A stretch of DNA of 63,044 nucleotides, filler included, from Hyphochytrium catenoides (lineage: Eukaryota > Protista > Hyphochytriomycota): the NCBI GenBank assembly GCA_900088475.1. It is 10 parts of 10 records of this genome, joined end to end, with 100 filler letters (N's around TTAATTAATTAA, not from the genome) between each part and the next. Parts side by side here need not be neighbours in the genome. Positions count along the whole stretch, not along the records: positions 43,039 to 54,904 come from FLMG01003863.1; 9 more parts are not named here. The stretch is one strand, 5' to 3'. How positions within the stretch are numbered: position 1 is the stretch's first letter; each line of letters begins with the position of its first letter. The notes below the pieces were generated by a model, which was not told the DNA's origin, made no database searches, and saw only the letters and a program-made list of their open reading frames with translations. This document shows positions 43,039-55,004 of this stretch, piece after piece. A program made the translations under genes and the position numbers.

Positions 43039-43555
43039 GACTCGCTCGCTCTGCTCCAACCTGTCCCCAAGGACTCGCTCGCTCTGCTCCAACCTGTCCA
43101 ACTTCCCCCAAGGTCTCGCTCGCTCTGCTCCAACCTGTCCAACTTGTCCCCAAGGACTCGCTCGTTCTCCTCCAACCTCCTCTCCACGGTCTCCATTATT
43201 GTTACCAGTTGGCGGGCAAGATACTCGACGGACACCTGATCGACAACTTCCAGAGCGCGAGAACGCTGCTGTCCTTCGTCACTACTCTCCCTTCTTGCTT
43301 GGGAAGACCCGGCAGCTTCTTGCTGTTGTCGTTTGAGGAGTCCAACGATATGCCTAGCCAATGGCTTTGACACCTTAGCTCTTCAATGAGGTCGGTGAAG
43401 CACTCTTCCATTGTGATGTGACCCGCAACAACAATTTCAAGGAACCCCCAAGAAAATCCCTTAGAGGTCAACTTCTGAAGTAAAGCCTGTCGATCCCCTT
43501 CATTGTCCGGCAAGACGACGAGTGCGAGCGTTTCCAGCGACGAGATGTTGACCAT
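43039..43555 (-). CDS. Hypothetical protein: possible SAM-like helical domain followed by tandem LGDKLDRLEQSER-type repeats; one frameshift near 43375; 3'-truncated
   Basis: The two ORFs join by adding one A (DLIEELKVSKPLARHIVGLLK). DNA repeats of ctcgctcgctctgctccaacctgtcc at 43041-43140. The domain call is a weak inference. Confidence 0.4.
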
Positions 43556-43557
43556 CG

Positions 43558-43588
<31 letters not shown>

Positions 43589-44484
43589 ATTGCTGCTACT
43601 GCTGCTAGTCCTTCACTTTGACTTAACGGATGGCGGCAAGGGCGGCAAAGTTGAAACGGCGGCAAAGTTGAAACCGAGAGCAATGATATCTTGGTCTTGT
43701 TATGTGTGCCGAGGGCCAAGGAAGGGGCTGGGGAATGATGAGAAAGGTCTTCTCTTTCAACGAAGAAGCTCTCGAATGGAGGTGAAGTAAAGGCCTTTAA
43801 ACAGTGTAATCCCCCCATCTCTTCTCCTTCTTTCTTCATATTTATCCCGAATCTATAAAACAAATCTGCACGTATAGTTTCCACAATCGATGGTTTCTGA
43901 TCATTCTTTCACTCCGTAATCAATGTACCACGCCCGATCGCCGAAAGCTACACTTATATAAATTGCTTTCAAACACCCATGTTTGCTCTGATGTTGTATC
44001 AGGAATAACCTCTGATTATCGACGATAGGGGTGAATGACATCTAGAATACCTGGAAGGAAAGATTTTAGAACATTGTAGCATATTTGACTCCGAAAGTTG
44101 CTTCCACAGACGACTTTATCACTGTTGAGGAGGATCAAACCAATCATGAAATGTTTCCGTTTTAGGGATTGTTTCGGAGTTCTGCTCGTCGTGATGCGGC
44201 CGTGAGGCTGATCTGCAGTTCGCATCACGAAGTGAAGCTTCTGCTGATGAATTTTCCAGATCTCCGTTACTGAGTTCTAGCCTCCACGTTTCCGATGTCC
44301 AGCCAAGAGGAGGAGACTGACATAGGCATGAATTTGGAAGCTCTTACTGGCAAGTGACAATCCAGCGCTATCCGCAGTAGGATGCTATCGATTGGTTCAA
44401 TGGATGGCATGACGATTGACAGAAAGCTGATACAAAGTTAGGGTGTCTTCTACGCGTGACCTCTCACCACAGAGGGCTACAACG

Positions 44485-47400
44485 ATGAGGCAGTTTGGCA
44501 GGCGTTCTGGAGGCCCTTCTGATAAGCGCCGCGTAGCTGTAATAGGGACCACACTGAGTGGCGTTGTGGCAGCCTATTTGTTGAGCTTCAAGCACGAAGT
44601 CACGCTGTTTCACACAGAAGATACCTTGGACGAGCTCACGCTCGCCACTTTTCTCAATAGTCCCATCCTGTCGAAGCTAGATACGAAGCTTCTGGAACTG
44701 ATACTCTTTTCTTATGGACCTGCTGCTTTTGCCAATGGAGGGAATGAACATGGACGCGGGTTGGCTTTCACCTTCAGCCATGCTACACAGCAGTCATTGC
44801 GCTTTCTCTCTTCAATATACTATCACAGAACGGCCCGCCAGAGCGAAGCCTTGGGCGGGCAGGAGTTGGGGCCGTCGTCCACTCTTCGTAGCGGAAAGCA
44901 GAAGGAATCCTTTGGAGTGTCTATCGCTTTCATGAAGACTCTCCTTCTTGCGATTAAAGACCTCGCGGGGCTGTCAGCACTATATCAATGGTTTAAGCTT
45001 TGCTGGTGGCTGCTTCTTGGAGACTGCCTGGTGTTCCGCATATTGAGCAGGTCTCGTGCTGATGAGACCTTAGCTTCATTTTTATCCCACAAAAGGCTTT
45101 CGGCCACTTTCACCACCGCCGTCTTTCTCCCTTTACTGGCCGCTCTAACTGGCTGCATAGCCGCTGATGGAGGACACACAGAAGACGAGGAGGTGGTATC
45201 GAAGGTGAAGGATACAGCAAACGAGGAAGTCTCTGTTGCTCATAGAGCATACTCTGCGCTGCTGAGTACACCGATGACGGATATAAGACGGCTGTTTCGA
45301 TCCTGGCTCTCCTCTGAGCTCTCTGTAGTTAGCGTCCCCATAGGCACGGAGATTCTAGAGGGCTGGTGCTCCGTGGTGCATCGAAATGTTAGAGGAATTG
45401 CAATCCAGTCAGTTCGGCCAGGTACTTCTTCTTCACTTGAAAAGGAAACAGGAGAGAAGCGAAAACCAGAGGTGACGTACAAAGCTAGTCAACAGACAAG
45501 TGATCGAGTCATTGGAACTCCAGATATCCTCCTACCTCTGCCCCTAGTTGAGGAGCATAAGGAGGGAGAGAAGGGAGAAGAAGAAAGGGTGATTACTGAA
45601 GCTTTCGATGAGATTGTCGTAGCCCTTCCCGCCCAACAGGCACAACAGCTCTGCCAGAACCTACCGGAGGAGCTAGAGGGAGCTCTAGAGGCTGTCAAGT
45701 ATGCGAAGTCGGACGCGACGCATCACTGTACGAGCCACATTCTCCCTCCGATGAGGGGGAAAAGCGTCGCCAGAAAGGCAGACAGACGAGTCCACTGCCA
45801 TACTGAAGGTGAAGGGGGACACCTGAGCATTACGCTCTCTCTAGGAGAGATGGCACGGCTAGTTAGTGAAGGACAGACAGAAAGAGAGAGGGTTCCTCCT
45901 TCCTCGCCTCTACCTGTCATGACCACTGTTTCTTCTACTTCAGCTCTGGCAGGCACTTTAGCGGTAGAAGAGGATTTAGTGTACTGTCATCTAACGTCTC
46001 AGAGACCGGTGCTGACAGATGCTTATAAGAAGGAAGTGCTTCCTATTATCAAGAAGGCGCAGGGCCAGGGCTCCCTCTGGTTCTGCAATGAGTTTTCCGC
46101 TCTTGATTCTCTCTCCACGAGAGAATGCGCCGTAGTATCGGCATTAGAGATAGCGAAGGGACTTTCAGTAACCTGTCCGTGGAAGGTACGCTAAATCCTC
46201 TAGCAAGAAGTTGTAGGGGAAGATGGAGGAAGTCCATTGTATGCCTATACGGTGTCTATTTTCACAGCTTGCTTGTCCTTACACCCGTTTCTTTTATTCA
46301 CCCTTCCCACTTCAAGCTCTGTGCTTTGTGGCACCTCTCTCGCATCTTTCTACCCTTACGCTTGTATGCTGTCCAAGCTTGCCCTAATCGTCTCTCTCCG
46401 CAGAAGAATCGTGGATCGGGTTCTGAGAGTCAAAACCTGCAAGCAATGTACGATGTAGACGCGTCCGATCGTGTCCTCTTACAGGCTCAACCTGGAAAAG
46501 AACCTGTCTCCTTCTGGATGTGTTGGGGTCTTTGGAGCTCTTACACCGATACCGTTCGTCCTCTGTCAAGCTCTCGCGCCGCCTCCCGTCTAGGTCGTCG
46601 GTCTCCGTCTCCGAGGCCCTCAGGGTCAGCCTCATCTCTCACTTCCCCTCTTCTTACTCCTTCCTCTCCTGCCACGTCGTCCTCTACGCCCAATCGGCGA
46701 TTAAGAGAAGAAGCGCATAGGGAAAGGACATTCCCTGAAGCTTGTGCCTCGCTTGCTCTTTTCATCGGTACCCGCGCACGTCTTTCTCCGGACGATGTTC
46801 TCCTCGACGTTGGTTTTGGAGCAGGAGACCAGCTCCTGATTTGGCTGCAAGCCTTTGGGGTGAGGTACATAACGGGAATAGAGCCTGTAGGCGCGCAGCT
46901 CGAATGCGCACGTCGGAGGATCCGTCAATTCTTAAGTGCCGACGAGACGGGGGAGGAACGGCAACATAGAACAACACTGTTGAGTCCAGACGAGAAACTA
47001 AAGGTGAGAAGGAGGATTGACGGTCGCAGCGTACATCTCCTTCAAGGATTCGCTCCGGAACTACCTTTTGCAGAGGAATCTTTCACCAAGATAGTCGCTG
47101 TTGATGCCGCCTACCACTTTGCCTCTCGGGAGGAGTTCATTCGACGTTCAGTGTCTCTCTTACGGGTTGGGGGCATTCTGACCTTTGCGGACATTGTCAT
47201 TGACTATCAGAAGCTAGGATATGCAGGTATGTGAGACCTTATGGTCAAATCAAAATATTTCAGTTTAGCCACGGCTATCCCGTCTATTTAGCAGCCGTTT
47301 AGGCGTATGCTGACTCTTCTTCTGCAAATGACAGACCGGCTTTTGATGTCGGTGTTTGGCTCTATGGCTCAGATCCCGTCAGTGAACATGATCAGTGCCA

Positions 47401-48092
47401 CCTCCATTCAGAAGCAGATGGTTGAGCATGGCTTTGTAGAGGTAATTTCTTTTTTTATCCTCCTCTTTAGTCCCCAGTCTACGGATCTGTTCCTGCCTGT
47501 TATCTCTGGATTGAAGCCTCCCGTATTCTTTTTTCACGACGTCTATCAGGTGTCTCTTCACTAGCACTCGCGCTTCTACCCTGTCTTCTGGCCTGATCTT
47601 TCTCAAACCTGATGGTCTTATGACATTCTCTTACGTTGTAGGTGGAAGCGATAGACTTAACTAAGGATACAATCCAGGGCTTCGTGAGCTTTGTGTTCCG
47701 TCGGTCCGCTCTCTTTAGGTTGGGCATATACTTTCTACATCAATGCTTACAGGGCTTCTTGCGTCTCTCCCCTTAGCAATGATAATAAGCCTTTTTGGTT
47801 CCCTCGCCTTGGCTCTATCCCTCTTTTGCCATTGTTCTTGGCATCATTTCGTCGTCTTTCCTATCTTGCGCTTCTCTTGACAAATCGCTCTGCTACCCAT
47901 GAATTTGCGTCCTTCAGCGCTCTTTCCGACCTCTAACCGAAACGCTCGCGTGCGTGACTTTCATCGTCCAGGGACTGCGACCTTTCAACGCGGACAAGAT
48001 GGGGCAAGTTCCAGTTGTTGGCCAGGACACTCCGTTGGCTTATTGAAAGAGGAATCATCAAGTTTGTCCTCTTTTCGGGCAGGAAGGAGTAG
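44485..48092 (+). CDS. Fusion of a degenerate NAD/FAD-binding amine-oxidase-like domain and a class I SAM methyltransferase; exons 44485-46185, 46404-47226, 47335-47441, 47642-47718, 47972-48092
   Basis: RRVAVIGTTLSGVVAAYLLSFKHEVTLF, FDEIVVALPAQQA and QGQGSLWFC...LSVTCPW, then a phase-0 intron, then WMCWGLW, ACASLA, LLDVGFGAGDQ and AVDAAYHF. Confidence 0.75.
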
Positions 48093-49241
48093 AGTAGATA
48101 AGAGCGAAAGGAACGCCAGTGACGGGCGTCCAGTCCGCCACTACTTCTAGTTGCTACTTTGACAGCTCTCGTTGCTCTCGCCCTTGCGCAGAAAGGAGAT
48201 GGAATGAAGGTAGAATTGACTGGACTCAGTCTGACTTCATCCTACATCACCGTGTTGCTCGGCCAAGAAACAAAGTGGCCTACACTACGGCACTGCAGGA
48301 TGAGGAAACAAGTCAGCAGACCCCAACCACGGACGCTCTCGTACGAAGGCTAAGATAGCCAGCCACTTACATGATTAGCCTAGAGGGCTAACATTAAGGT
48401 TTAGGGAACTCTTGGTCTTACACAGCCAGCGCCCTAGGGGCGCCTATATACATACATACCAGGCCCCGCTGCTGAAGAAGGGGAGAAGATAGCGGGACGT
48501 AAAGGTACTATGCAAGGGGTGTTGTTTAGTGCTGAACCTACATTATAGCGGGACAGGTCTCGCCTCTGTAAGATGTTTATATAGAATCTATTTTGCCTTC
48601 AGGCAGCAAGGCAGGTTGTACACTCATACATAGCAAGGTGACAGATCGGCTCGGCTTCTGTCTCGAACGACCTCCATATACTTTGACAGAGCACTGAGCG
48701 GCTGCTGCGAAATTAGTTCTTGATAAAGGACTTGGAGGTAATCGAGGGGCAGGACAGAGGCTGACACAGGAACAGACGAAACCGGTTTACCCGCAGGAAA
48801 GAGAGATATGAAGAAAGCGAACTTCAGCGGAGGAGCGGTTCGACACGCTGGCCTAAAGCTGAAACAGAGACAAGGAGACAAACTGCGTTGTGTTTGCGAT
48901 ATCGAAGGATTGGGCTGTGTTATTTATTCTAAACTTACTATACAACTTCACAGCCAGACCAGACAGGTCAGTCTTCTAAAAAAAACATAGGACAGCACGA
49001 AGTGGCTGCCCCAACTGTGGCTCCTCCTTGATAGGACCCGGTGGATGACAAGAGGCAAGACGAGAAAGAGAGACATGACAAAGGAACAGGTAAGTAATAG
49101 ATAAGAAGAGACATGAGGAGAGATGGAGAAAAGAGGGCCCAGCGCTAGAGAGGGCGAGGGCACGAGACGGAAAAGGTTGCTGCCCGTAAGAAGAAGGAGA
49201 CGAGCAATGATGTTCTATGGTACAAAAAGAGAGAGAATCTC

Positions 49242-52200
49242 TCAGTCTAAGCTTGCCCTCTCGCTCCGTCCTTCTGGACGAGAGCTCCATAGGAGTGTGA
49301 GCGATGAGAGCTCTGCCTCTGAAGGCAATGCCGAAGCTTGGTGGGCCGGCCCGCTAGATGTGAAGCCATCGCCCTCATCATCAACATCAGAGGCAGCTTC
49401 TAGATCCTGCATGTATTGCCTGAAGTCCTCTGTAGAGCTGCGGCCCGAAAACTGCTCTGAGGGAGAAGGACCCGGGGTGCAGATCTGGTCGGAACACGCA
49501 GGAGTCTGAAGAGACTTCTTTCCTTCTGTCACCGTCTCCAGATCCTGATTGACCAGCGCGAACAGCCGACGAGCAAAGGGGAAATTGAGGAAGGTGAGGA
49601 GTTGTGAGAGGACGAACAACAGTTTTAGCGGGCCACTCACCCTCTCAAAGGCTTCTTTTTCTTGCCTATCCAGGCGCAATGCTCGAATGATGAAGAAGAG
49701 CACGGTGATCACGATAGCAATGAAGACGTAGATCGGGAGAAGATTTAGGGAGTCTGGACGCCTGACTTGAGCACTAGCAGGCTTCTGTGTGTCTGTCATT
49801 TACAGACAAAACAGGTTATTAGCAATAAGAGAGGGGAAGAGAGAGAGAGAGAGAGAGAGTATGACAGCGAAAGAAAGCTAGTCACGGAGAACTAAAGGAG
49901 AGAGCAGAGAGAAAGAGAAAGACAGCTAGAGAACGAAAGAAGAAAGAAAGAGAGAAAGGTTAAACACACAGACTGACATAGCACAGTAAAGAGATGAGAA
50001 GTCCAGGATGGACCCTTTCGATGGTCGTACGGACCAATCTCAAGCAGAGAACAGAGGGACGAGCCACAAGAGAGAAGGAAAGGTAGGACAAGCAGTCTGA
50101 GACGCCAGGAAGGACAAAAGTGGCGAGCAACTCACTCTCAAATGACTTCGGATCAGTGCACAAGTAAGCATTCCTCGTGCCATTGCCGTGAGAGGTCCCG
50201 CACTTGAAGAGCCTCTTTCCGCCTCCCGAACCTATCGCCTTCTCTCTCTCCAGACAGGTGGACTCACAGCAGTCTCCCCCATCGTATCCACAAGCCGCAT
50301 TGTTGTTCACCTCATCGCACCAACCGTCTCCCCTCCAGCTTTCCATAGCGCATTGCTCCTTAGGGAAAGGACAGTTGGGCTTGTGTCTGCAAAAGAGAAA
50401 GTTGAAATAATCTGCCTTCTCTTCCTCGCTCTTTTTCTCGAGATCGCTGCCATCCAGAAACTCAGGCCCCGTGCTGATGATAGAGTCAAGAGGAAAGAGC
50501 CCAGAAACGAGAAGAAGATGCATCAGATGGACAGAGAGCCAACCCTGCATGTGTCCCTGTTGGTCCACCGCGAAGGTCACTTCATTCTTCTTCAGCCGCC
50601 TCAGAATGTCATCATCGACATCAAAGGTAGCCATCCTTCGACCATTTGTCAGGTCTTTGAACACCTTATCGTCCGCGGATAGCGTCCCAAACAGTGCAGA
50701 GGTCGCTGACAGTATACCTGTGACTGTAAGATTCTCCGCCCCCAGCTTGTTCATCCGCTGGTTTAGCCCTGCAACAGGATCTGGACTAGACCCGTTAACG
50801 AATACTTCGGACCAGTAGGCCGTCTTCTTCTTCGCGATAAGGCCATCCTGATAGCCCTGACAGCGCTGGTCCAGTGCGGTGTTCCCGAGCTCGTGGATAA
50901 GGCAGAGCGTGCTGGTGGTCTCAGGATGCTGCGTAAGAAATACCTCTCCTGATCTCTTGCCTGCTTGGTACTCGTTTTGCCCTACGTGCACAACGAGCCT
51001 ATCCACCTGGAGCTTGCCTATAGCTTCGTACCCTGAGTTGATCGAGACCATTGGGATAGAGCTCTTATCTGCCAACTTGATGGCGTCCTTGAGCCCATCC
51101 ACGCTAGGGATCGACAGGATAATGCCTGAAGTTCCTCGACTCTCGGCAACCGCTCTTTCTACCTTTTCTGCCATGTCTTTAACGTCAAAGACGTTGCTTG
51201 TTATCAAATAATTCAGTTTACCCTGTCCTGGACAGTTGAAGCTCCCTCCTCCGTCTACCCGAGGCGCCGTGCAGTTGAGACCGAGGCCCAGATCGTGCGC
51301 TGCAAGCTCCACTCCGGCACTTACAATCTTCCAAAAGTCGTTAGTAGGATACCCGTGAGTCACCATCGTAATATCCAGGTCTTGAGGCCGACTCAGAGCC
51401 CAACCGCCACCTCTTTTAGAGAGAGAAGACCTGGGTCCTGAGCGGATAACGCGCATACTGGGTCTGAAGCCGCGAGTCAGGCGATAGACAGAGAGAGCGA
51501 CGGATAAATAGCCCTGAAGATAAGGCTGGGTATCGATTGTCTCAAAGAGCTTTTGCGGAGAGGTGCGGGCTTTGTGGGCGGCAATGCTTCCAAGAGACGT
51601 GAGGAAAATTGGAGATTCCGTGCTTGGGCCCTCCTCTCCTGGTGTTTTTAAGTCTCTCGCAGAGAGAGCATTTTCGACCAGATGCTGGGACTTCTCTCCT
51701 ACAGAGAAGATGTGCACTATTCTTTTGTCCTTCCTCATCATCTCTGTCATATTAGCCAAGGCCAGTGCGGCCTGGTCCCCGGTGAAGACTCTACTGTCAC
51801 ACAACATAGCTTGCTTGTCACACGCCGCCTTTAGTCCCCGTCCATACCCGCGACACATAAGACTCTCGGACAAATCCAGCGCACTATCCCGTACGCAGAT
51901 GCCAGTCAAAAGGGACGAAGTAGACACCTTCATACCCGCACTGAACCCGGCCGAATAGCCTACCTCTGTGTCATTGACGCCGATGTGCAGCCGCTTAGAT
52001 GTCGTCCAGTCCCCATAGCTTCCCACCGTGACAATAGTCCAGTTAGCTGATAACGCGTCGAGCTTGCCCAAAATACTAGGAGAGCCTTCTGTCGCTAGAA
52101 TAGGGACGATAAGAATGTTTCGCGCGGCGTCTATCTCCCTTGAAAGACGAGCCAGAGTGTTCTGAACAATCATCTCCTGGGCCTCTCGTGATGACGAGAG

Positions 52201-52518
52201 ATTTGAAGAGCTCTCTACTATGGAAAGGTTGCCTCCAAAGGGTTCCCATAGCTTTGCCTCTACTTTCATCACTTTGGCTGCCTCCAGTACTCCTCTGGAC
52301 ACTTCGTACCAGTGAGAGCTGACATTAGAAGAGAGGTAGACCGGTGAGAGAAAGTGGACGGAGAGGCCTGAACGAGAGAGACACGCCTTCCCGCATTCTA
52401 TGTCAGAACCATTCGACTCGCCGATTGTAGAGAGCGCCAGGAGGAGATAGCAGAGAGAGAGGACGAGAGCCGTTTTGTGGCCTCTCTCTCTCTCTTGCTC
52501 CCTCCTCCAGGGCTTCAT
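49242..52518 (-). CDS. Single-pass membrane protein: signal peptide, two type I periplasmic sugar-binding-like domains, LNR/Notch-like Cys module, TM helix, acidic Ser-rich tail; exons 52518-50136, 49792-49641, 49544-49242
   Basis: ITMVTHGYPTNDFWKIVSAG, IPMVSINSG, VHVGQNEYQAG, ELGNTALDQRCQG, FAVDQQGHMQGW; WRGDGWCDEVNNNAACGYDGGDCC; TM LLPIYVFIAIVITVLFFII followed by RALR. Introns are phase-consistent. Confidence 0.8.
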
Positions 52519-53684
52519 GGTCCCCCGTAGGGCAAGGACAGCTTTCAGACTAAGCTGTGGTGACACCGCCACGGAGCCATGAAGAGAGAGAGAGAGAGAC
52601 AGAGGGAGAATCGATAGATAGAGAGAGAGAGAGAAAGACAACGAGAGAGGTGGCGCGACGGAAGGGTTTGTGGGGAAAGACTGCTCCTAACAGCCCGACG
52701 TCTCCCTTTTCTCTTCAGAGCTCACAAATATTATCTTTGCTCTACCGGCCTCTCCAGCAAGGAGAACGAGAAAGAAAGTAGCGGTAAAACTCTTCCGCCC
52801 TCATCTGAGCTTGGGCATACAGAGATCGCTAGAGAGAACTGAAGGAGAAGACAGTTGGAGATAGCGGCGAGGAAGGAGATTTCCTCTTTCCTCTCATTCC
52901 ATCGTGATTTCCCCCTTTGCTTGCTCAAAGAAATGGCTCGGATGACGGCAAGCCCTGCTATCTAGGGTTCACCTTCCAACGGTCTGTGATGCGCGGAAGG
53001 GGAAAAGAGCGAAAGAGAGAAAGAGAGAGAGGAAAATCAGAGGAAGGACAAAGAGAGGGAAACGGGAGCGTTCACAGAGGTTGGCAAGAGAGAGTTAAAG
53101 AGATAAGGAAGTCAGTCAATTGTAGAGACTCTGCCTGCTGCATGTGGGGCTGGTGCCGTCACTAGCTGATGAGAGACGCTATGATGAGATGACCAGGAAA
53201 GAAAAAGAAGCTCTCTACTTTTTTGCTTTTTGGAGACGGGCGCCGGTCCTCGCTCTACCCTCTTTCTCCTCTCACACGCTTTCCTCTCTCTTCTCTCTCT
53301 TTGTCTCTCTCTTGCTTGTGCTCGATATTCCCTCTCTCCTTGTCTCTCTTTCTCTCTCTCTCTCTCTTTTGCTCTTTTTCTCTTTTGAAGGAGTTGAGGG
53401 GGAAAGTTCGACGAGGTCCTGCCAACACCATTCCTCAAGAAAGAAAACAAAGGTCAATAGAGTTCGTAGAGAAGGGATAAGAAACAGAGATGAGAGAGAC
53501 AGTGGTGAGAGAAAGAGTGGGTGGAAGAGAGAGACAGAGAGAGAGAGAGAGAAAACAGGAGCTACCAAGATAAGAGAGAGCAAGAGGGGGTAAAGAAGAG
53601 ATAATGTAGGGCATGTACAGGTAACTTTTGATACAGGAAGAGGGAGAAGAGTGTAAAGCCAGAGAGGGAGAGAGAAAGAGAGAA

Positions 53685-53728
<44 letters not shown>

Positions 53729-55004
53729 CGGGGGTCTGAAGGTGAGTCTAAGAGGGCGGAGACAGGGCGGCAGCAGGGCTGAAGGCCAAACCTTGGCGAG
53801 ACAGAGCAATAGTGTAGATACACCAAAGGAAACTTTGCAACTTCATAAACGAAACTAACAGTCCAATATTTTCGCTGTATATAACACAGGAATATGCATT
53901 TTTTAAGCTCGTTCATCATATATTTCCGTAAAGCTTTCACGTGTGGGTGATGGAGCAATTGAGGCGGGCGTATCTTCTCTGAGAAAAGCAGGACAGCTGC
54001 TACGCAGGACAGGGCGAGTATCTCAGGGCTAGATGCAATAATCTTTGAACCACAGTTTTATTCCTCCTTACACCTCGTTATATAAGATTCTTTGTACGGC
54101 CCTTTTAGATGTCATGAAAAAGAGGTATACGTAAGGCCTAAGGGTCGGCTAAGCTTTGGAATTAGCTGGACAATGGTAGGCACTATAGGAACCTTCGAGT
54201 CTTGCTAAAAAGCGGACTATTATTAGATTGCTACGAATGGGGACCTTTGAAGTGGAATCAGAAAGGCGGTTTATGATTGAGTAGTACTAATTTGTTGGGG
54301 GTCGCGCTTCAGACATGCGGTCCTGTTTGTCTCTAAATATAAAGGGCAGACGAGGATGGAAGACCAAAAATCCAGAAAGAGAGCGAGTGTGGAAGAGAGA
54401 GGAAACGCCGTGAAGAACTAGAGAAAAAAGAAAGAGAAAGAGCGAGGGAAAGAGAAAGAGAGAGGGAGAAAGGGAGTGCAGAGAGAGAGGAAGAGCGTAA
54501 AGAGATAGCTTTGTAGGAAAGAGAGAGAGAGAGAGAGAGAGCACCATAGGACTGCAAGCAGTGCTTTCCTACCTTCCTCTTTGTGTAGCTCTGGGTAACT
54601 TGAAGCTTGCGTTTCCGTCCACTAGCCCTCTCGTCACTTCCCGTCACCATTCCTTTCTTCTTTCTTCCTTCTTCCTTTCTTCTACTCTCTCCCCTCCGTT
54701 TTATCACCTTTTGCCCTCCTCAAAAAAAGGACGATCGTTTTTTGTCGCCTTCTGTCTATTTGCTGGGCGGTCTGTTTTTTGCTTTCTTTCTCCTCTCTCT
54801 CTTTCTTCTCTGCACAAGTTATTGAACATGTACTTTTATCTTATTTCGCTGAGCGTAAGCGAAGCGTCTAGTGGATAGAGCATGAGCCCTCCCAATAAAT
54901 CATCNNNNNNNNNNNNNNNNNNNNNNNNNNNNNNNNNNNNNNNNNNNNTTAATTAATTAANNNNNNNNNNNNNNNNNNNNNNNNNNNNNNNNNNNNNNNN
55001 NNNN

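What the first reader, a model, noticed from the sequence alone, without database searches (positions are those of the whole stretch)
49242..52518. Eukaryotic receptor-like protein built from tandem bacterial sugar-binding domains plus an LNR module
Seen: signal peptide, a divergent binding domain (~52360-51435), a well-conserved one (~51380-50465), an LNR/Notch-like Cys repeat (~50355-50260), one TM helix and a ~110-aa acidic Ser-rich tail with no enzyme domain. Nearly the whole ectodomain is one 2.4-kb exon, while the TM and tail are on small spliced exons. Known: type I periplasmic binding proteins (Peripla_BP_4/RbsB-like) serve bacterial ABC importers; LNR is a eukaryotic Ca-binding module guarding the Notch cleavage site. 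Inference: a horizontally acquired domain domesticated as a surface sugar/polyol sensor or scavenger, perhaps regulated by proteolysis.
Basis: partly seen in the sequence, partly recalled or inferred. Interest (0 to 1): 0.72.

Follow-up and report, generated by a model that had tools for sequence, protein, structure and literature searches.

The report
Output-less tandem sugar-binding-domain surface receptor
This is a real, selectively constrained gene of an unidentified eukaryotic microbe. It encodes a surface protein with two bacterial-type sugar-binding domains and a small cysteine-rich stalk. That sensor head is shared with a widespread but unstudied family of protist receptors, but this copy carries no signalling domain.

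Summary
On the minus strand, a 2,383-nt exon (52518-50136) encodes a signal peptide, a divergent and a well-kept Peripla_BP_4 domain, and an LNR-type cysteine module. Two small downstream exons supply one TM helix and a 115-aa acidic, Ser-rich tail. Splicing could not be tested because no RNA run exists. It is supported by phase-matched canonical splice sites, by homologues that carry a TM at the same place, and by polymorphisms. Strain and haplotype differences give pN/pS of about 0.11, so the gene is functional.

The architecture is not unique. An exhaustive search found many protist proteins at 30% identity or less with the same tandem pair. Sources include diatoms, a labyrinthulomycete, Picozoa and a green alga. 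In them the pair is fused to class C 7TM domains, to hybrid histidine kinases or to a single TM. The LNR-plus-Cys stalk recurs before 7TM and kinase outputs, so it reads as a rigid stalk, not a Notch-like protease switch.

Domain 2 keeps the conserved pocket residues and is closest to inositol/rhizopine-type binding proteins. Domain 1 has lost them but stays under selection. The best reading is an output-less polyol or sugar sensor, co-receptor or clearance receptor. Recent gene transfer is not supported. It is a new variant of a known kind, of moderate interest.

The parts
50136..52518 (-). Exon 1 (2,383 nt, ends in phase 1). It encodes the signal peptide, PBP domain 1, PBP domain 2 and the LNR+Cys stalk (aa 1-794 plus 1 nt).
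   Evidence: ORF and sequence. Pfam. In this frame 25 of the 34 listed coding differences between strains or haplotypes are synonymous, giving pN/pS 0.11.
52411..52518 (-). Signal peptide region (aa 1-36): charged N-terminus, hydrophobic core at aa ~17-32, then small residues.
   Evidence: Hydropathy peak at windows 15-17. Helix 13-32 in the model. No signal-peptide predictor was available.
51403..52371 (-). Domain 1 (aa ~50-372): a divergent type I periplasmic-binding fold whose conserved pocket residues are lost.
   Evidence: Peripla_BP_4 E 4.9e-5, below cut-off. AF2 pLDDT 82.8 and Z 20-22 to sugar SBPs. It keeps 28 of 69 family-conserved residues. pN/pS 0.11.
50419..51396 (-). Domain 2 (aa ~375-700): a well-kept Peripla_BP_4 / CUT2 sugar- or polyol-binding domain.
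   Evidence: Pfam 86.8 bits. The NCBIfam rhizopine SBP model gives 176 bits, below its cut-off of 420. 4ru1 matches at Z 30.6, rmsd 2.1 A over 284 aa. It keeps 50 of 69 conserved residues, including H388, F395, W396, N494, R552, D633 and Q658.
50137..50391 (-). Stalk (aa 710-794): a 4-Cys LNR (aa 714-750) followed by the motifs CC.STC and CGT..N.[YF].C.DP. It has 8 conserved Cys.
   Evidence: Pfam Notch/LNR 23.5 bits against cut-off 21.2. Pappalysin LNR hits. It is 35-46% identical to the stalks of P0060, P0004, P0026, P0011 and P0033, with 14 invariant columns.
49793..50135 (-). Intron 1 (343 nt): GTGAGT donor, long CT tract, AG acceptor.
   Evidence: Sequence and phase match. Not tested with RNA.
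49641..49792 (-). Exon 2 (152 nt): juxtamembrane linker, TM helix (aa 812-830, 49742-49686) and a basic stop-transfer stretch.
   Evidence: Kyte-Doolittle peak 3.0. Homologues have a TM 10-35 aa after the DP..E end of the stalk.
49545..49640 (-). Intron 2 (96 nt, in frame, no stop codon): GTGAGT donor, CAG acceptor.
   Evidence: Sequence. It holds three SNPs and a 1-nt insertion (at 49548) between strains. The insertion would shift the frame if this stretch were coding.
49242..49544 (-). Exon 3: an acidic, Ser-rich cytoplasmic tail (aa 846-945) and the TGA stop at 49244-49242.
   Evidence: Translation and composition. No Pfam domain. No kinase or 7TM remnant anywhere in 43039-54904.

Best explanation
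The locus is a functional eukaryotic gene for a type I single-pass plasma-membrane or secretory-pathway protein of about 945 aa.

Its ectodomain is the sensor cassette of a protist receptor family. The cassette has two CUT2-type (Peripla_BP_4) Venus-flytrap domains in tandem, then an LNR-plus-cysteine stalk. In relatives this cassette is joined to a class C 7TM domain or to a hybrid histidine kinase. Here it is joined only to a TM helix and a 115-aa acidic, Ser-rich tail.

Inferred mechanism:
- Domain 2 keeps the family's conserved cleft residues. It closes on a small neutral polyol or monosaccharide; inositol or an inosamine-like ligand is the best lead.
- Domain 1 has lost those residues but is still under purifying selection. 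It would act as a non-binding partner lobe, much as GB2 partners GB1 in the GABA-B receptor.
- The disulfide- and Ca-stabilised stalk holds the pair at a fixed distance from the membrane.
- With no output domain, the protein would act in trans. It could be a co-receptor or modulator that presents the liganded sensor to a signalling partner. This would be like bacterial LuxP/LuxQ or XylFII/LytS, or like the natriuretic peptide clearance receptor NPR-C relative to NPR-A.

Shown: the gene, its domains, their folds, selective constraint and family membership. Inferred: the splicing, the topology, the ligand class and the mode of signalling.
For: - Domains and folds.
- Purifying selection in the modelled frame: 25 synonymous against 9 nonsynonymous differences, pN/pS 0.11, binomial p 1e-9. 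Domain 1 alone gives 20 against 7.
- Family: 1,582 hits. Tandem-PBP proteins with 7tm_3, HisKA/HATPase/REC or a single TM come from Mucochytrium, Picozoa, Ostreobium, Rhizosolenia, Seminavis and metagenomes.
- Stalk homology, and a TM directly after the stalk in relatives.
- Trees constrained to put the window's D1 with LNR-group D1 and its D2 with LNR-group D2 are not rejected. p-AU is 0.69 and 0.74, and their likelihood is higher than that of the short free search.
- Pocket residues are kept in D2 and lost in D1.
- No output domain in the 6 kb downstream.
- Precedents for output-less or in-trans PBP sensors: PMC8050422 for bacteria and PMC12965686 for Entamoeba EhVFT. NPR-C and GABA-B are from general knowledge.
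Against: - No RNA evidence exists for either intron, for expression or for the 3' end.
- The ligand class rests on similarity below family cut-offs (rhizopine model 176 against 420 bits). It also rests on my mapping of conserved columns to RbsB-type contact positions, which is recalled from memory.
- No partner protein is known. Paralogues with outputs in this genome could not be looked for, because only this piece is available.
- The tail has no recognisable motif. It does not share the motif conserved in the diatom-type single-TM forms.
- The placement of the window's domains in the free trees is unresolved, and domain 1 is a long branch.
Confidence: 0.55

Rival explanations
1. It is a clearance, scavenger or decoy receptor. 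The tethered binding domains capture an extracellular polyol or sugar for endocytic uptake, or they buffer the ligand away from signalling paralogues, with no signalling of their own (NPR-C-like).
For: There is no output domain. The binding cleft of domain 2 is intact. Single-TM, short-tail tandem-PBP proteins recur in protists: 14 of the 150 best representatives, including Seminavis P0038.
Against: No endocytic motif could be recognised in the tail (by eye). Eukaryotes are not known to use binding-protein-dependent importers (PMC5168858 states that SBP-coupled ABC uptake seems exclusively prokaryotic). Nothing separates this reading from the co-receptor reading.
Confidence: 0.2
2. The TM ORF is not part of the gene. 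Exon 1 is read through to the stop at 49960, giving a secreted or GPI-anchored tandem-PBP protein with a hydrophobic C-terminus. The ORF 49799-49242 would then be a separate small membrane-protein gene or no gene at all.
For: The ORF continues for 58 codons past the donor and ends in a hydrophobic stretch. The TM ORF has its own ATG at 49799. A GPI-anchored VFT protein exists in Entamoeba (PMC12965686). No RNA data are available.
Against: The donor is a canonical GTGAGT placed exactly at the conserved end of the stalk. A CT tract, an AG and the correct phase lead into a strong TM helix followed by basic residues. All LNR-group relatives carry a TM at that position. The hydrophobicity of the read-through is what a CT-rich intron translates to.
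Confidence: 0.12
3. It is a Notch-like receptor activated by proteolysis. The LNR masks a juxtamembrane cleavage site until ligand binding exposes it, and the tail is then released.
For: An LNR lies next to the membrane. The receptor is single-pass, with a tail that could in principle be released.
Against: There is only one LNR, and it is a 4-Cys variant. There is no HD/NOD/NODP domain. The same stalk precedes 7TM and histidine-kinase outputs, which need no cleavage. LNRs also occur in pappalysins, where they do not gate a receptor.
Confidence: 0.06
4. It results from a recent horizontal transfer of a bacterial tandem binding-protein gene into this genome, later fitted with an LNR and a TM.
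For: A bacterial 660-aa tandem SBP (P0002) aligns over both domains at 28% identity over 649 aa. It sits in an ABC operon. It is the single most identical sequence to domain 2, at 34-37%.
Against: Bacterial tandems are within-protein duplications: their D1 and D2 are sisters, with support 99-100. Eukaryotic D1s and D2s form separate clades. The window's domains are not inside the bacterial clade in the IQ-TREE run. The stalk is shared with eukaryotic receptors. GC content does not differ from the flanks, and the gene has introns.
Confidence: 0.04
5. It is a decaying relic of a receptor kinase or GPCR gene that lost its output domain.
For: All LNR-bearing relatives found have an output domain. 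Domain 1 is degenerate.
Against: pN/pS is 0.11 over the whole gene, including domain 1. The ORF is intact, and the only listed well-supported coding indel is in frame, GGA at 52240.
Confidence: 0.03

Closest known systems
Protist tandem-Peripla_BP_4 receptors. Examples: Mucochytrium quahogii P0004 (2xPBP-LNR-ANF_receptor-7tm_3), metagenomic P0026 (PBP-LNR-7tm_3), P0011, P0033 and P0060 (2xPBP-LNR-TM-hybrid histidine kinase), Seminavis robusta P0045 (2xPBP-7TM) and P0038 (2xPBP-1TM). All are uncharacterised.
   Same: The same tandem D1-D2 pair, with the less conserved domain first. The LNR group has the same LNR+Cys stalk at 35-46% identity and a TM at the same distance. All match the same rhizopine/inositol-type SBP subfamily below cut-off.
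   Different: Overall identity is 30% or less. The window protein combines the LNR stalk with a single TM and no output domain, a combination not seen among the 150 best representatives. Its domain 1 has lost residues that other D1s keep at 84-96%.
Bacterial CUT2 ABC-transporter binding proteins of the inositol/rhizopine type (PDB 4ru1, 3rot; NCBIfam NF052284; tandem form P0002).
   Same: The fold matches (Z 30.6, rmsd 2.1 A to 4ru1). Conserved motifs are shared: HG..D.FW, SINSG, the C...RC.G pair, FD and DQQ.Y.QG.
   Different: The window protein has no ABC permease or ATPase partner and is membrane-tethered by a TM helix. It scores below the equivalog cut-off (176 against 420 bits). It also has a eukaryotic gene structure.
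Class C GPCRs (mGluR, CaSR, GABA-B), and the diatom class C-like GPCRs whose N-termini resemble ABC sugar-binding proteins (PMC3727952).
   Same: A type I PBP Venus-flytrap sensor, then a cysteine-rich stalk, then the membrane. In GABA-B only one flytrap of the pair binds ligand (general knowledge). Relatives of the window protein carry 7tm_3.
   Different: There is no 7TM domain here. The flytraps are Peripla_BP_4, not ANF_receptor. The pair is within one chain rather than between two chains. The stalk is LNR-type, not NCD3G.
Natriuretic peptide clearance receptor NPR-C, compared with NPR-A/B (general knowledge).
   Same: A member of a PBP-ectodomain receptor family that keeps the ectodomain, one TM and a short tail but lacks the family's catalytic output.
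   Different: It is an unrelated PBP subfamily (ANF_receptor) with a peptide ligand, found in animals. This is an analogy only.
Entamoeba histolytica EhVFT (PMC12965686).
   Same: A protist membrane-tethered, PBP-derived Venus-flytrap protein with no 7TM or enzyme domain. It is proposed to signal through partners, and its knock-down reduces motility and phagocytosis.
   Different: EhVFT has a single flytrap of the amino-acid-binding type, a GPI anchor, and no LNR. No ligand has been found for it either.
Notch negative regulatory region and pappalysin LNR modules.
   Same: The LNR consensus G.CD...N...C.[WY]DGGDC with Ca-ligand Asp/Asn positions.
   Different: There is one repeat, not three. 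It has four rather than six cysteines in the repeat. It is fused to an extra Cys motif. There is no heterodimerisation domain and no protease domain.

Membership tests
Pfam Peripla_BP_4 (PF13407), type I periplasmic binding fold | Profile match above the gathering score | tested here: met
   The whole protein scores 86.8 bits against a cut-off of 35.1, carried by domain 2. Domain 1 alone scores only 23.4 bits, E 4.9e-5, below the cut-off.
Pfam Peripla_BP_4 (PF13407), type I periplasmic binding fold | Two alpha/beta lobes joined by a hinge, superposable on solved sugar-binding proteins | tested here: met
   Domain 2 matches 4ru1 at Z 30.6, rmsd 2.1 A over 284 of 286 residues. Domain 1 matches 4kq9, 7x0g and 4ru1 at Z 21-22 over ~270 residues. 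These are predicted models, not solved structures.
Bacterial ABC-importer substrate-binding protein (functional class) | Encoded with, and docking on, an ABC permease and ATPase | tested here: not met
   There are no ABC genes in 43039-54904. The protein is TM-anchored in a eukaryotic gene. The bacterial relative P0002 does sit next to a BPD_transp_2 permease.
NCBIfam NF052284 rhizopine catabolism SBP (equivalog) | Score at or above the curated cut-off of 420 bits | tested here: not met
   The score is 176.2 bits. The single-domain bacterial and the eukaryotic relatives tested also fall below the cut-off, at 107-315 bits. Only the tandem P0002 exceeds it, with 734 bits summed over two domains. 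The resemblance is at subfamily level only.
Class C GPCR | 7tm_3 seven-helix domain | tested here: not met
   Pfam shows no 7tm_3. There is one TM helix. tblastn with the 7TM part of P0004 finds nothing in the piece.
Class C GPCR | Venus-flytrap ectodomain followed by a cysteine-rich stalk | tested here: inconclusive
   The same order of parts is present. However, the flytrap family (Peripla_BP_4) and the stalk family (LNR-type) differ from ANF_receptor and NCD3G.
Notch-type negative regulatory region | Three tandem LNRs packed on a heterodimerisation (NOD/NODP) domain that hides a cleavage site | tested here: not met
   One LNR match (23.5 bits), and no NOD/NODP match.
LNR module (PF00066) | Profile match above the gathering score, with the Cys and Asp/Asn pattern | tested here: met
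   23.5 bits against 21.2, at aa 714-750. Pappalysin LNR hits at E 8e-7 to 2e-5. The C, D and N columns are invariant in alignment A2. Only four Cys lie within the repeat proper.
Protist tandem-PBP receptor family (unnamed; LNR-stalk subgroup) | Tandem D1-D2 pair that groups D1 with D1 and D2 with D2 | tested here: inconclusive
   The free trees leave the window's domains unresolved. The constrained trees are not rejected and score better than the short free search (p-AU 0.74 and 0.69).
Protist tandem-PBP receptor family (unnamed; LNR-stalk subgroup) | LNR + CC.STC + CGT..N.[YF].C.DP stalk directly before the membrane | tested here: met
   35-46% identity and 14 invariant columns. The TM follows only in the spliced model.
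Protist tandem-PBP receptor family (unnamed; LNR-stalk subgroup) | Cytoplasmic or membrane output domain (7tm_3 or HisKA/HATPase/REC) | tested here: not met
   None is found in the protein or within the piece. P0060's apparent short tail is an artefact: the next ORF begins in the H-box of HisKA.

The most novel reading that the evidence does not exclude
The tandem pair is an intramolecular Venus-flytrap 'heterodimer': a ligand-binding D2 and a degenerate regulatory D1, like GABA-B in a single chain. The D1-D2-LNR-stalk cassette would be a portable eukaryotic sensor head that evolution has plugged onto three different outputs: class C 7TM, hybrid histidine kinase, or none. The output-less form in this window would then work in trans, handing its liganded state to a kinase or GPCR paralogue. 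That would be a eukaryotic counterpart of bacterial binding-protein-dependent sensor kinases such as LuxP/LuxQ.
Probability: 0.2. Interest if true: 0.7.

Novelty: new variant of a known kind. Interest (0 to 1): 0.5.

Why it matters
Receptors built on bacterial binding-protein folds are central to animal signalling: glutamate, GABA-B, calcium, taste and natriuretic peptide receptors. How that fold was recruited is still argued from a few lineages.

This locus leads to a large, unstudied protist family. In it a different binding-protein subfamily, the CUT2 sugar/polyol type, was duplicated in tandem, given an LNR-type stalk, and combined with 7TM, histidine-kinase or no output. That is a natural experiment in receptor modularity.

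It also offers a tractable target. The ectodomain is encoded by one intron-free exon, so it can be expressed and screened for ligands directly. An identified ligand would give a first handle on what free-living protists sense with these receptors.

The window's gene itself is one more, rather divergent member of the family, so its value is as an entry point rather than a surprise.

Tried and rejected
- Word-index protein searches. The whole protein gave only one LNR hit, from Ectocarpus. The domain 2 region gave only the bacterial tandem P0002. The neighbouring 583-aa ORF gave nothing. The organism therefore could not be named and has no close sequenced relative in these collections.
- A scan of JGI metagenome contigs for close relatives found none.
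- Sequencing runs: only DNA runs of a coded 'organism A', and no RNA, so splicing and expression could not be tested. Read laying showed no joints.
- The ESM Atlas by features gave only generic bacterial binding-protein clusters at 0.86.
- tblastn with the kinase and 7TM parts of relatives against the piece gave nothing convincing; the best hit had E 0.02. I therefore dropped the idea of a hidden output exon nearby.
- The FastTree placement of domain 2 next to two bacterial singles did not survive IQ-TREE, so I do not use it.
- I looked for tail motifs shared with the single-TM homologues. Four diatom-type proteins share a motif, but the window does not have it.
- tRNA and Rfam scans of the piece were empty.
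- The joined three-exon protein was built only inside sandbox scripts, for translation, hydropathy and coordinates. All database and fold searches used exon 1 or its parts by reference. No signal-peptide or topology predictor was available.
Full report
**What is there**

The piece 43039-54904 has about 50% GC, many (AG)n/(CT)n microsatellites and low coding density. On the minus strand an ORF runs from 52641 to 49960, and its first ATG is at 52518.

From that ATG the product has these parts:
- A charged N-terminus and a hydrophobic core at aa 15-35.
- A first domain that matches Pfam Peripla_BP_4 only weakly (E 4.9e-5, covering profile positions 12-251 of 258).
- A second domain that matches Peripla_BP_4 strongly (86.8 bits against a cut-off of 35.1).
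- One LNR (23.5 against 21.2 bits, aa 714-750). It also hits the LNRs of pappalysins in the PDB.

AlphaFold models built on alignments of relatives are confident for both binding domains. The whole exon 1 has pLDDT 78.6 and pTM 0.82, and domain 1 alone has pLDDT 82.8. Domain 2 superposes on the Acidothermus CUT2 binding protein 4ru1 at Z 30.6, rmsd 2.1 A over 284 of 286 residues. Domain 1 superposes on sugar-binding proteins at Z 20-22 over about 270 residues.

**Gene model**

- Exon 1 ends at 50136 in phase 1, before a GTGAGT donor.
- After a 343-nt intron with a long CT tract and an AG at 49794-49793, exon 2 (49792-49641) continues in the right phase.
- Exon 2 encodes a 16-aa linker and a very hydrophobic helix (aa 812-830, Kyte-Doolittle peak 3.0), followed by Arg/Lys-rich sequence.
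- A second GTGAGT...CAG interval of 96 nt (49640-49545) separates exon 2 from the tail exon (49544-49242, TGA stop).
- The joined model is 945 aa with a 115-aa acidic, Ser-rich tail that holds no domain.

No RNA run of the organism exists in the run index, so splicing is inferred. Three observations support it:
1. In every relative with the same stalk, a TM helix follows 10-35 residues after the conserved 'C.DP..E' end of the stalk. The window's donor sits immediately after 'DPKSFE'.
2. DNA contigs from other runs of the same organism differ from the window at many places. In the proposed 96-nt intron there are three substitutions and a 1-nt insertion at 49548. The insertion would break the frame if the interval were coding.
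3. The read-through alternative adds only a Leu/Ser/Cys-rich peptide, which is what a CT tract encodes.

I put the spliced model at about 0.8.

**Is it a working gene?**

Thirty-four of the best-supported differences between strains or haplotypes fall in the modelled coding sequence. Of these, 25 are synonymous and 9 are not, while only 24% of sites are synonymous. That gives pN/pS of about 0.11 (binomial p 1e-9).
- Domain 1 alone shows 20 synonymous against 7 nonsynonymous (p 9e-8).
- Domain 2 shows 5 against 0.
- The only listed well-supported indel in coding sequence is an in-frame GGA at 52240.

One caveat applies: 25 further, less well supported differences were not listed by the tool. 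Two haplotypes occur within single runs, so the organism is probably diploid and heterozygous. A 298-nt contig with one difference occurs in a soil metagenome.

**Relatives**

Word-index searches found almost nothing. The exhaustive profile search found 1,582 proteins at E<=1e-3, none more than about 30% identical over the ectodomain.

Among the 150 best representatives:
- 66 are single-domain proteins of bacterial size.
- 21 are tandem proteins without a later TM. Several sit in bacterial-type contexts. P0002, for example, lies in an operon with a xylose-isomerase-like TIM-barrel protein, a Zn-dehydrogenase and a CUT2 permease.
- 17 are tandem proteins followed by five or more TM helices. Pfam confirms 7tm_3 in the three of these that were scanned.
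- 14 are tandem proteins with one TM and a short tail.
- A small group carries the LNR as well: P0004 (2xPBP-LNR-ANF_receptor-7tm_3, Mucochytrium quahogii), P0026 (PBP-LNR-7tm_3), and P0011, P0033 and P0060 (2xPBP-LNR-TM-HisKA/HATPase/REC).

P0060 looked like an exact architectural twin of the window protein. However, the next ORF on its contig starts inside the H-box of a HisKA domain, so it is the front half of a receptor kinase.

Named sources of tandem-PBP proteins are a labyrinthulomycete, Picozoa, the green alga Ostreobium and the diatoms Rhizosolenia and Seminavis. The Seminavis entries carry only automatic names: 'ABC transporter substrate-binding protein' and 'acid type B receptor subunit 1'.

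**The stalk**

Alignment of aa 700-794 with the corresponding parts of the LNR group gives 35-46% identity and 14 invariant columns. The pattern is a 4-Cys LNR, then CC.STC, a variable loop, and CGT..N.[YF].C.DP.

Because this module stands before 7TM domains and before kinases, I read it as a rigid disulfide- and Ca-stabilised spacer. It would be comparable in position to the cysteine-rich domain of class C GPCRs. I do not read it as a Notch-style protease gate. There is a single repeat and no NOD/NODP domain.

**Origin**

In trees of all domains:
- Bacterial tandem proteins are within-protein duplications. Their D1 and D2 are sisters at 99-100% support.
- The diatom-type D1s and D2s form two separate clades (99-100%).
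- The D1s and D2s of the LNR group also form their own clades.
- The window's domain 2 is unresolved on the backbone in the IQ-TREE run, outside the bacterial-type clade. Its domain 1 is a long branch.
- Constraining each window domain to the matching LNR-group clade gave trees that are not rejected, and their likelihood was better than that of the short free search (p-AU 0.74 and 0.69). This shows compatibility, not proof.

Together with the shared stalk, the simplest history is vertical descent within an old eukaryotic receptor family whose binding domains derive ultimately from bacterial CUT2 proteins. A recent transfer into this genome is not supported.

**Ligand and mechanism**

Both the bacterial and the eukaryotic members match NCBIfam's rhizopine (inosamine) binding-protein model better than any other model. 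The window protein and all the single-domain and eukaryotic members tested fall below its cut-off. The nearest solved structures are 4ru1 and 3rot. From memory, 4ru1 was solved with myo-inositol bound; the tool's title is cut off.

Of 69 alignment columns that are at least 70% conserved in the single-domain proteins, domain 2 keeps 50. These include H388, F395, W396, N494, R552, D633, Q654 and Q658. By position in the motifs they correspond to the sugar-contacting residues of ribose-binding protein. That mapping is from memory and was not checked against coordinates.

Domain 1 keeps 28 of the 69 and has replaced most of the candidate contact residues: L62, H69, G166, M221, L309-G310, E326 and T330. 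The D1 domains of other family members keep them at 84-96%. Yet domain 1 is as constrained as the rest of the protein.

I therefore propose a binding D2 paired with a non-binding structural or regulatory D1. With no output domain in the protein or in the 6 kb downstream, the protein could act in one of two ways. It could act in trans as a co-receptor, as bacterial LuxP, XylFII, ChvE and TorT do for their kinases (PMC8050422). Or it could act as a clearance or decoy receptor, as NPR-C does in animals. A membrane-tethered, output-less flytrap protein that affects motility and phagocytosis was recently described in Entamoeba (PMC12965686).

**Literature**

A 2013 survey noted three Phaeodactylum class C-like GPCRs whose N-termini resemble ABC sugar-binding proteins (PMC3727952). 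Gut fungi have class C GPCRs with type II binding-protein domains (PMC5168858). Three full-text searches found no paper on the tandem Peripla_BP_4 pair, the LNR stalk or the single-pass forms.

**Verdict**

The gene is a divergent, output-less member of a widespread but uncharacterised protist receptor family, so it is a new variant of a known kind. Interest is moderate (0.5), mainly as an entry point to that family.

**Limits**

- The organism is unidentified.
- There are no RNA data.
- The ligand and the mode of action are inferred.
- The joined three-exon protein was never sent to a database or fold tool.

Noticed in passing
window 44443-47234 (+): Two overlapping ORFs lie in different frames. 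The first is 583 aa, with a dinucleotide-binding-like N-terminus but no Pfam hit and no homologue by word search. The second is 369 aa, and its C-terminal half is a class I SAM methyltransferase of the cyclopropane/mycolic-acid-synthase type (Methyltransf_11 E 3.6e-10; Atlas 0.97). They are probably one spliced gene, convergent with the receptor gene.
   Followed up: partly
window 52583-52649, 53661-53726, 54429-54541 and other places in 52560-54900: Long (AG)n/(CT)n microsatellites and related purine/pyrimidine repeats fill the 2.4 kb upstream of the gene. No convincing ORF lies there.
   Followed up: partly
window 52579-52544 (-): A short upstream ORF of 11 codons, out of frame, lies in the presumed 5' leader, 61 nt before the main ATG.
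   Followed up: no
window 49061-49241: Two contig versions are present in the same sequencing runs. One is identical to the window. The other has 14 differences and one indel in 181 nt of the 3' flank. The organism therefore looks diploid and heterozygous, or the sample is mixed.
   Followed up: partly
window 50222-50519: A 2025 soil metagenome run holds a 298-nt contig with a single difference, covering the end of domain 2 and the LNR. The organism or a very close strain may live in soil.
   Followed up: no
L002 221-6178: P0060 (2xPBP-LNR-TM) is followed after 50 nt by an ORF that begins in the H-box of HisKA and continues with HATPase and REC domains. It is one receptor hybrid histidine kinase split by a frameshift or an intron. 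The contig has 67% GC.
   Followed up: partly
L001 538-5677: The bacterial tandem binding protein P0002 (hydrothermal-vent metagenome) sits between a xylose-isomerase-like TIM-barrel gene, a Zn-dependent dehydrogenase and a CUT2 permease. The layout suggests polyol or inositol catabolism. Its two domains are near-copies of each other.
   Followed up: partly
tails of P0087, P0098, P0103, P0138: Four single-TM tandem-PBP proteins share a cytoplasmic motif directly after the TM, roughly YR.YKL...LE..G..VP.LS.G...SS.Y.P. The window protein lacks it. The motif may be a docking site for a partner.
   Followed up: no
P0003 (Myxococcales MAG), P0036, P0042 and others: Proteins with 7-21 tandem copies of the same LNR-like repeat scored among the top hits. 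One is attributed to a myxobacterial genome bin, so this LNR variant is not confined to eukaryotes in the databases.
   Followed up: no
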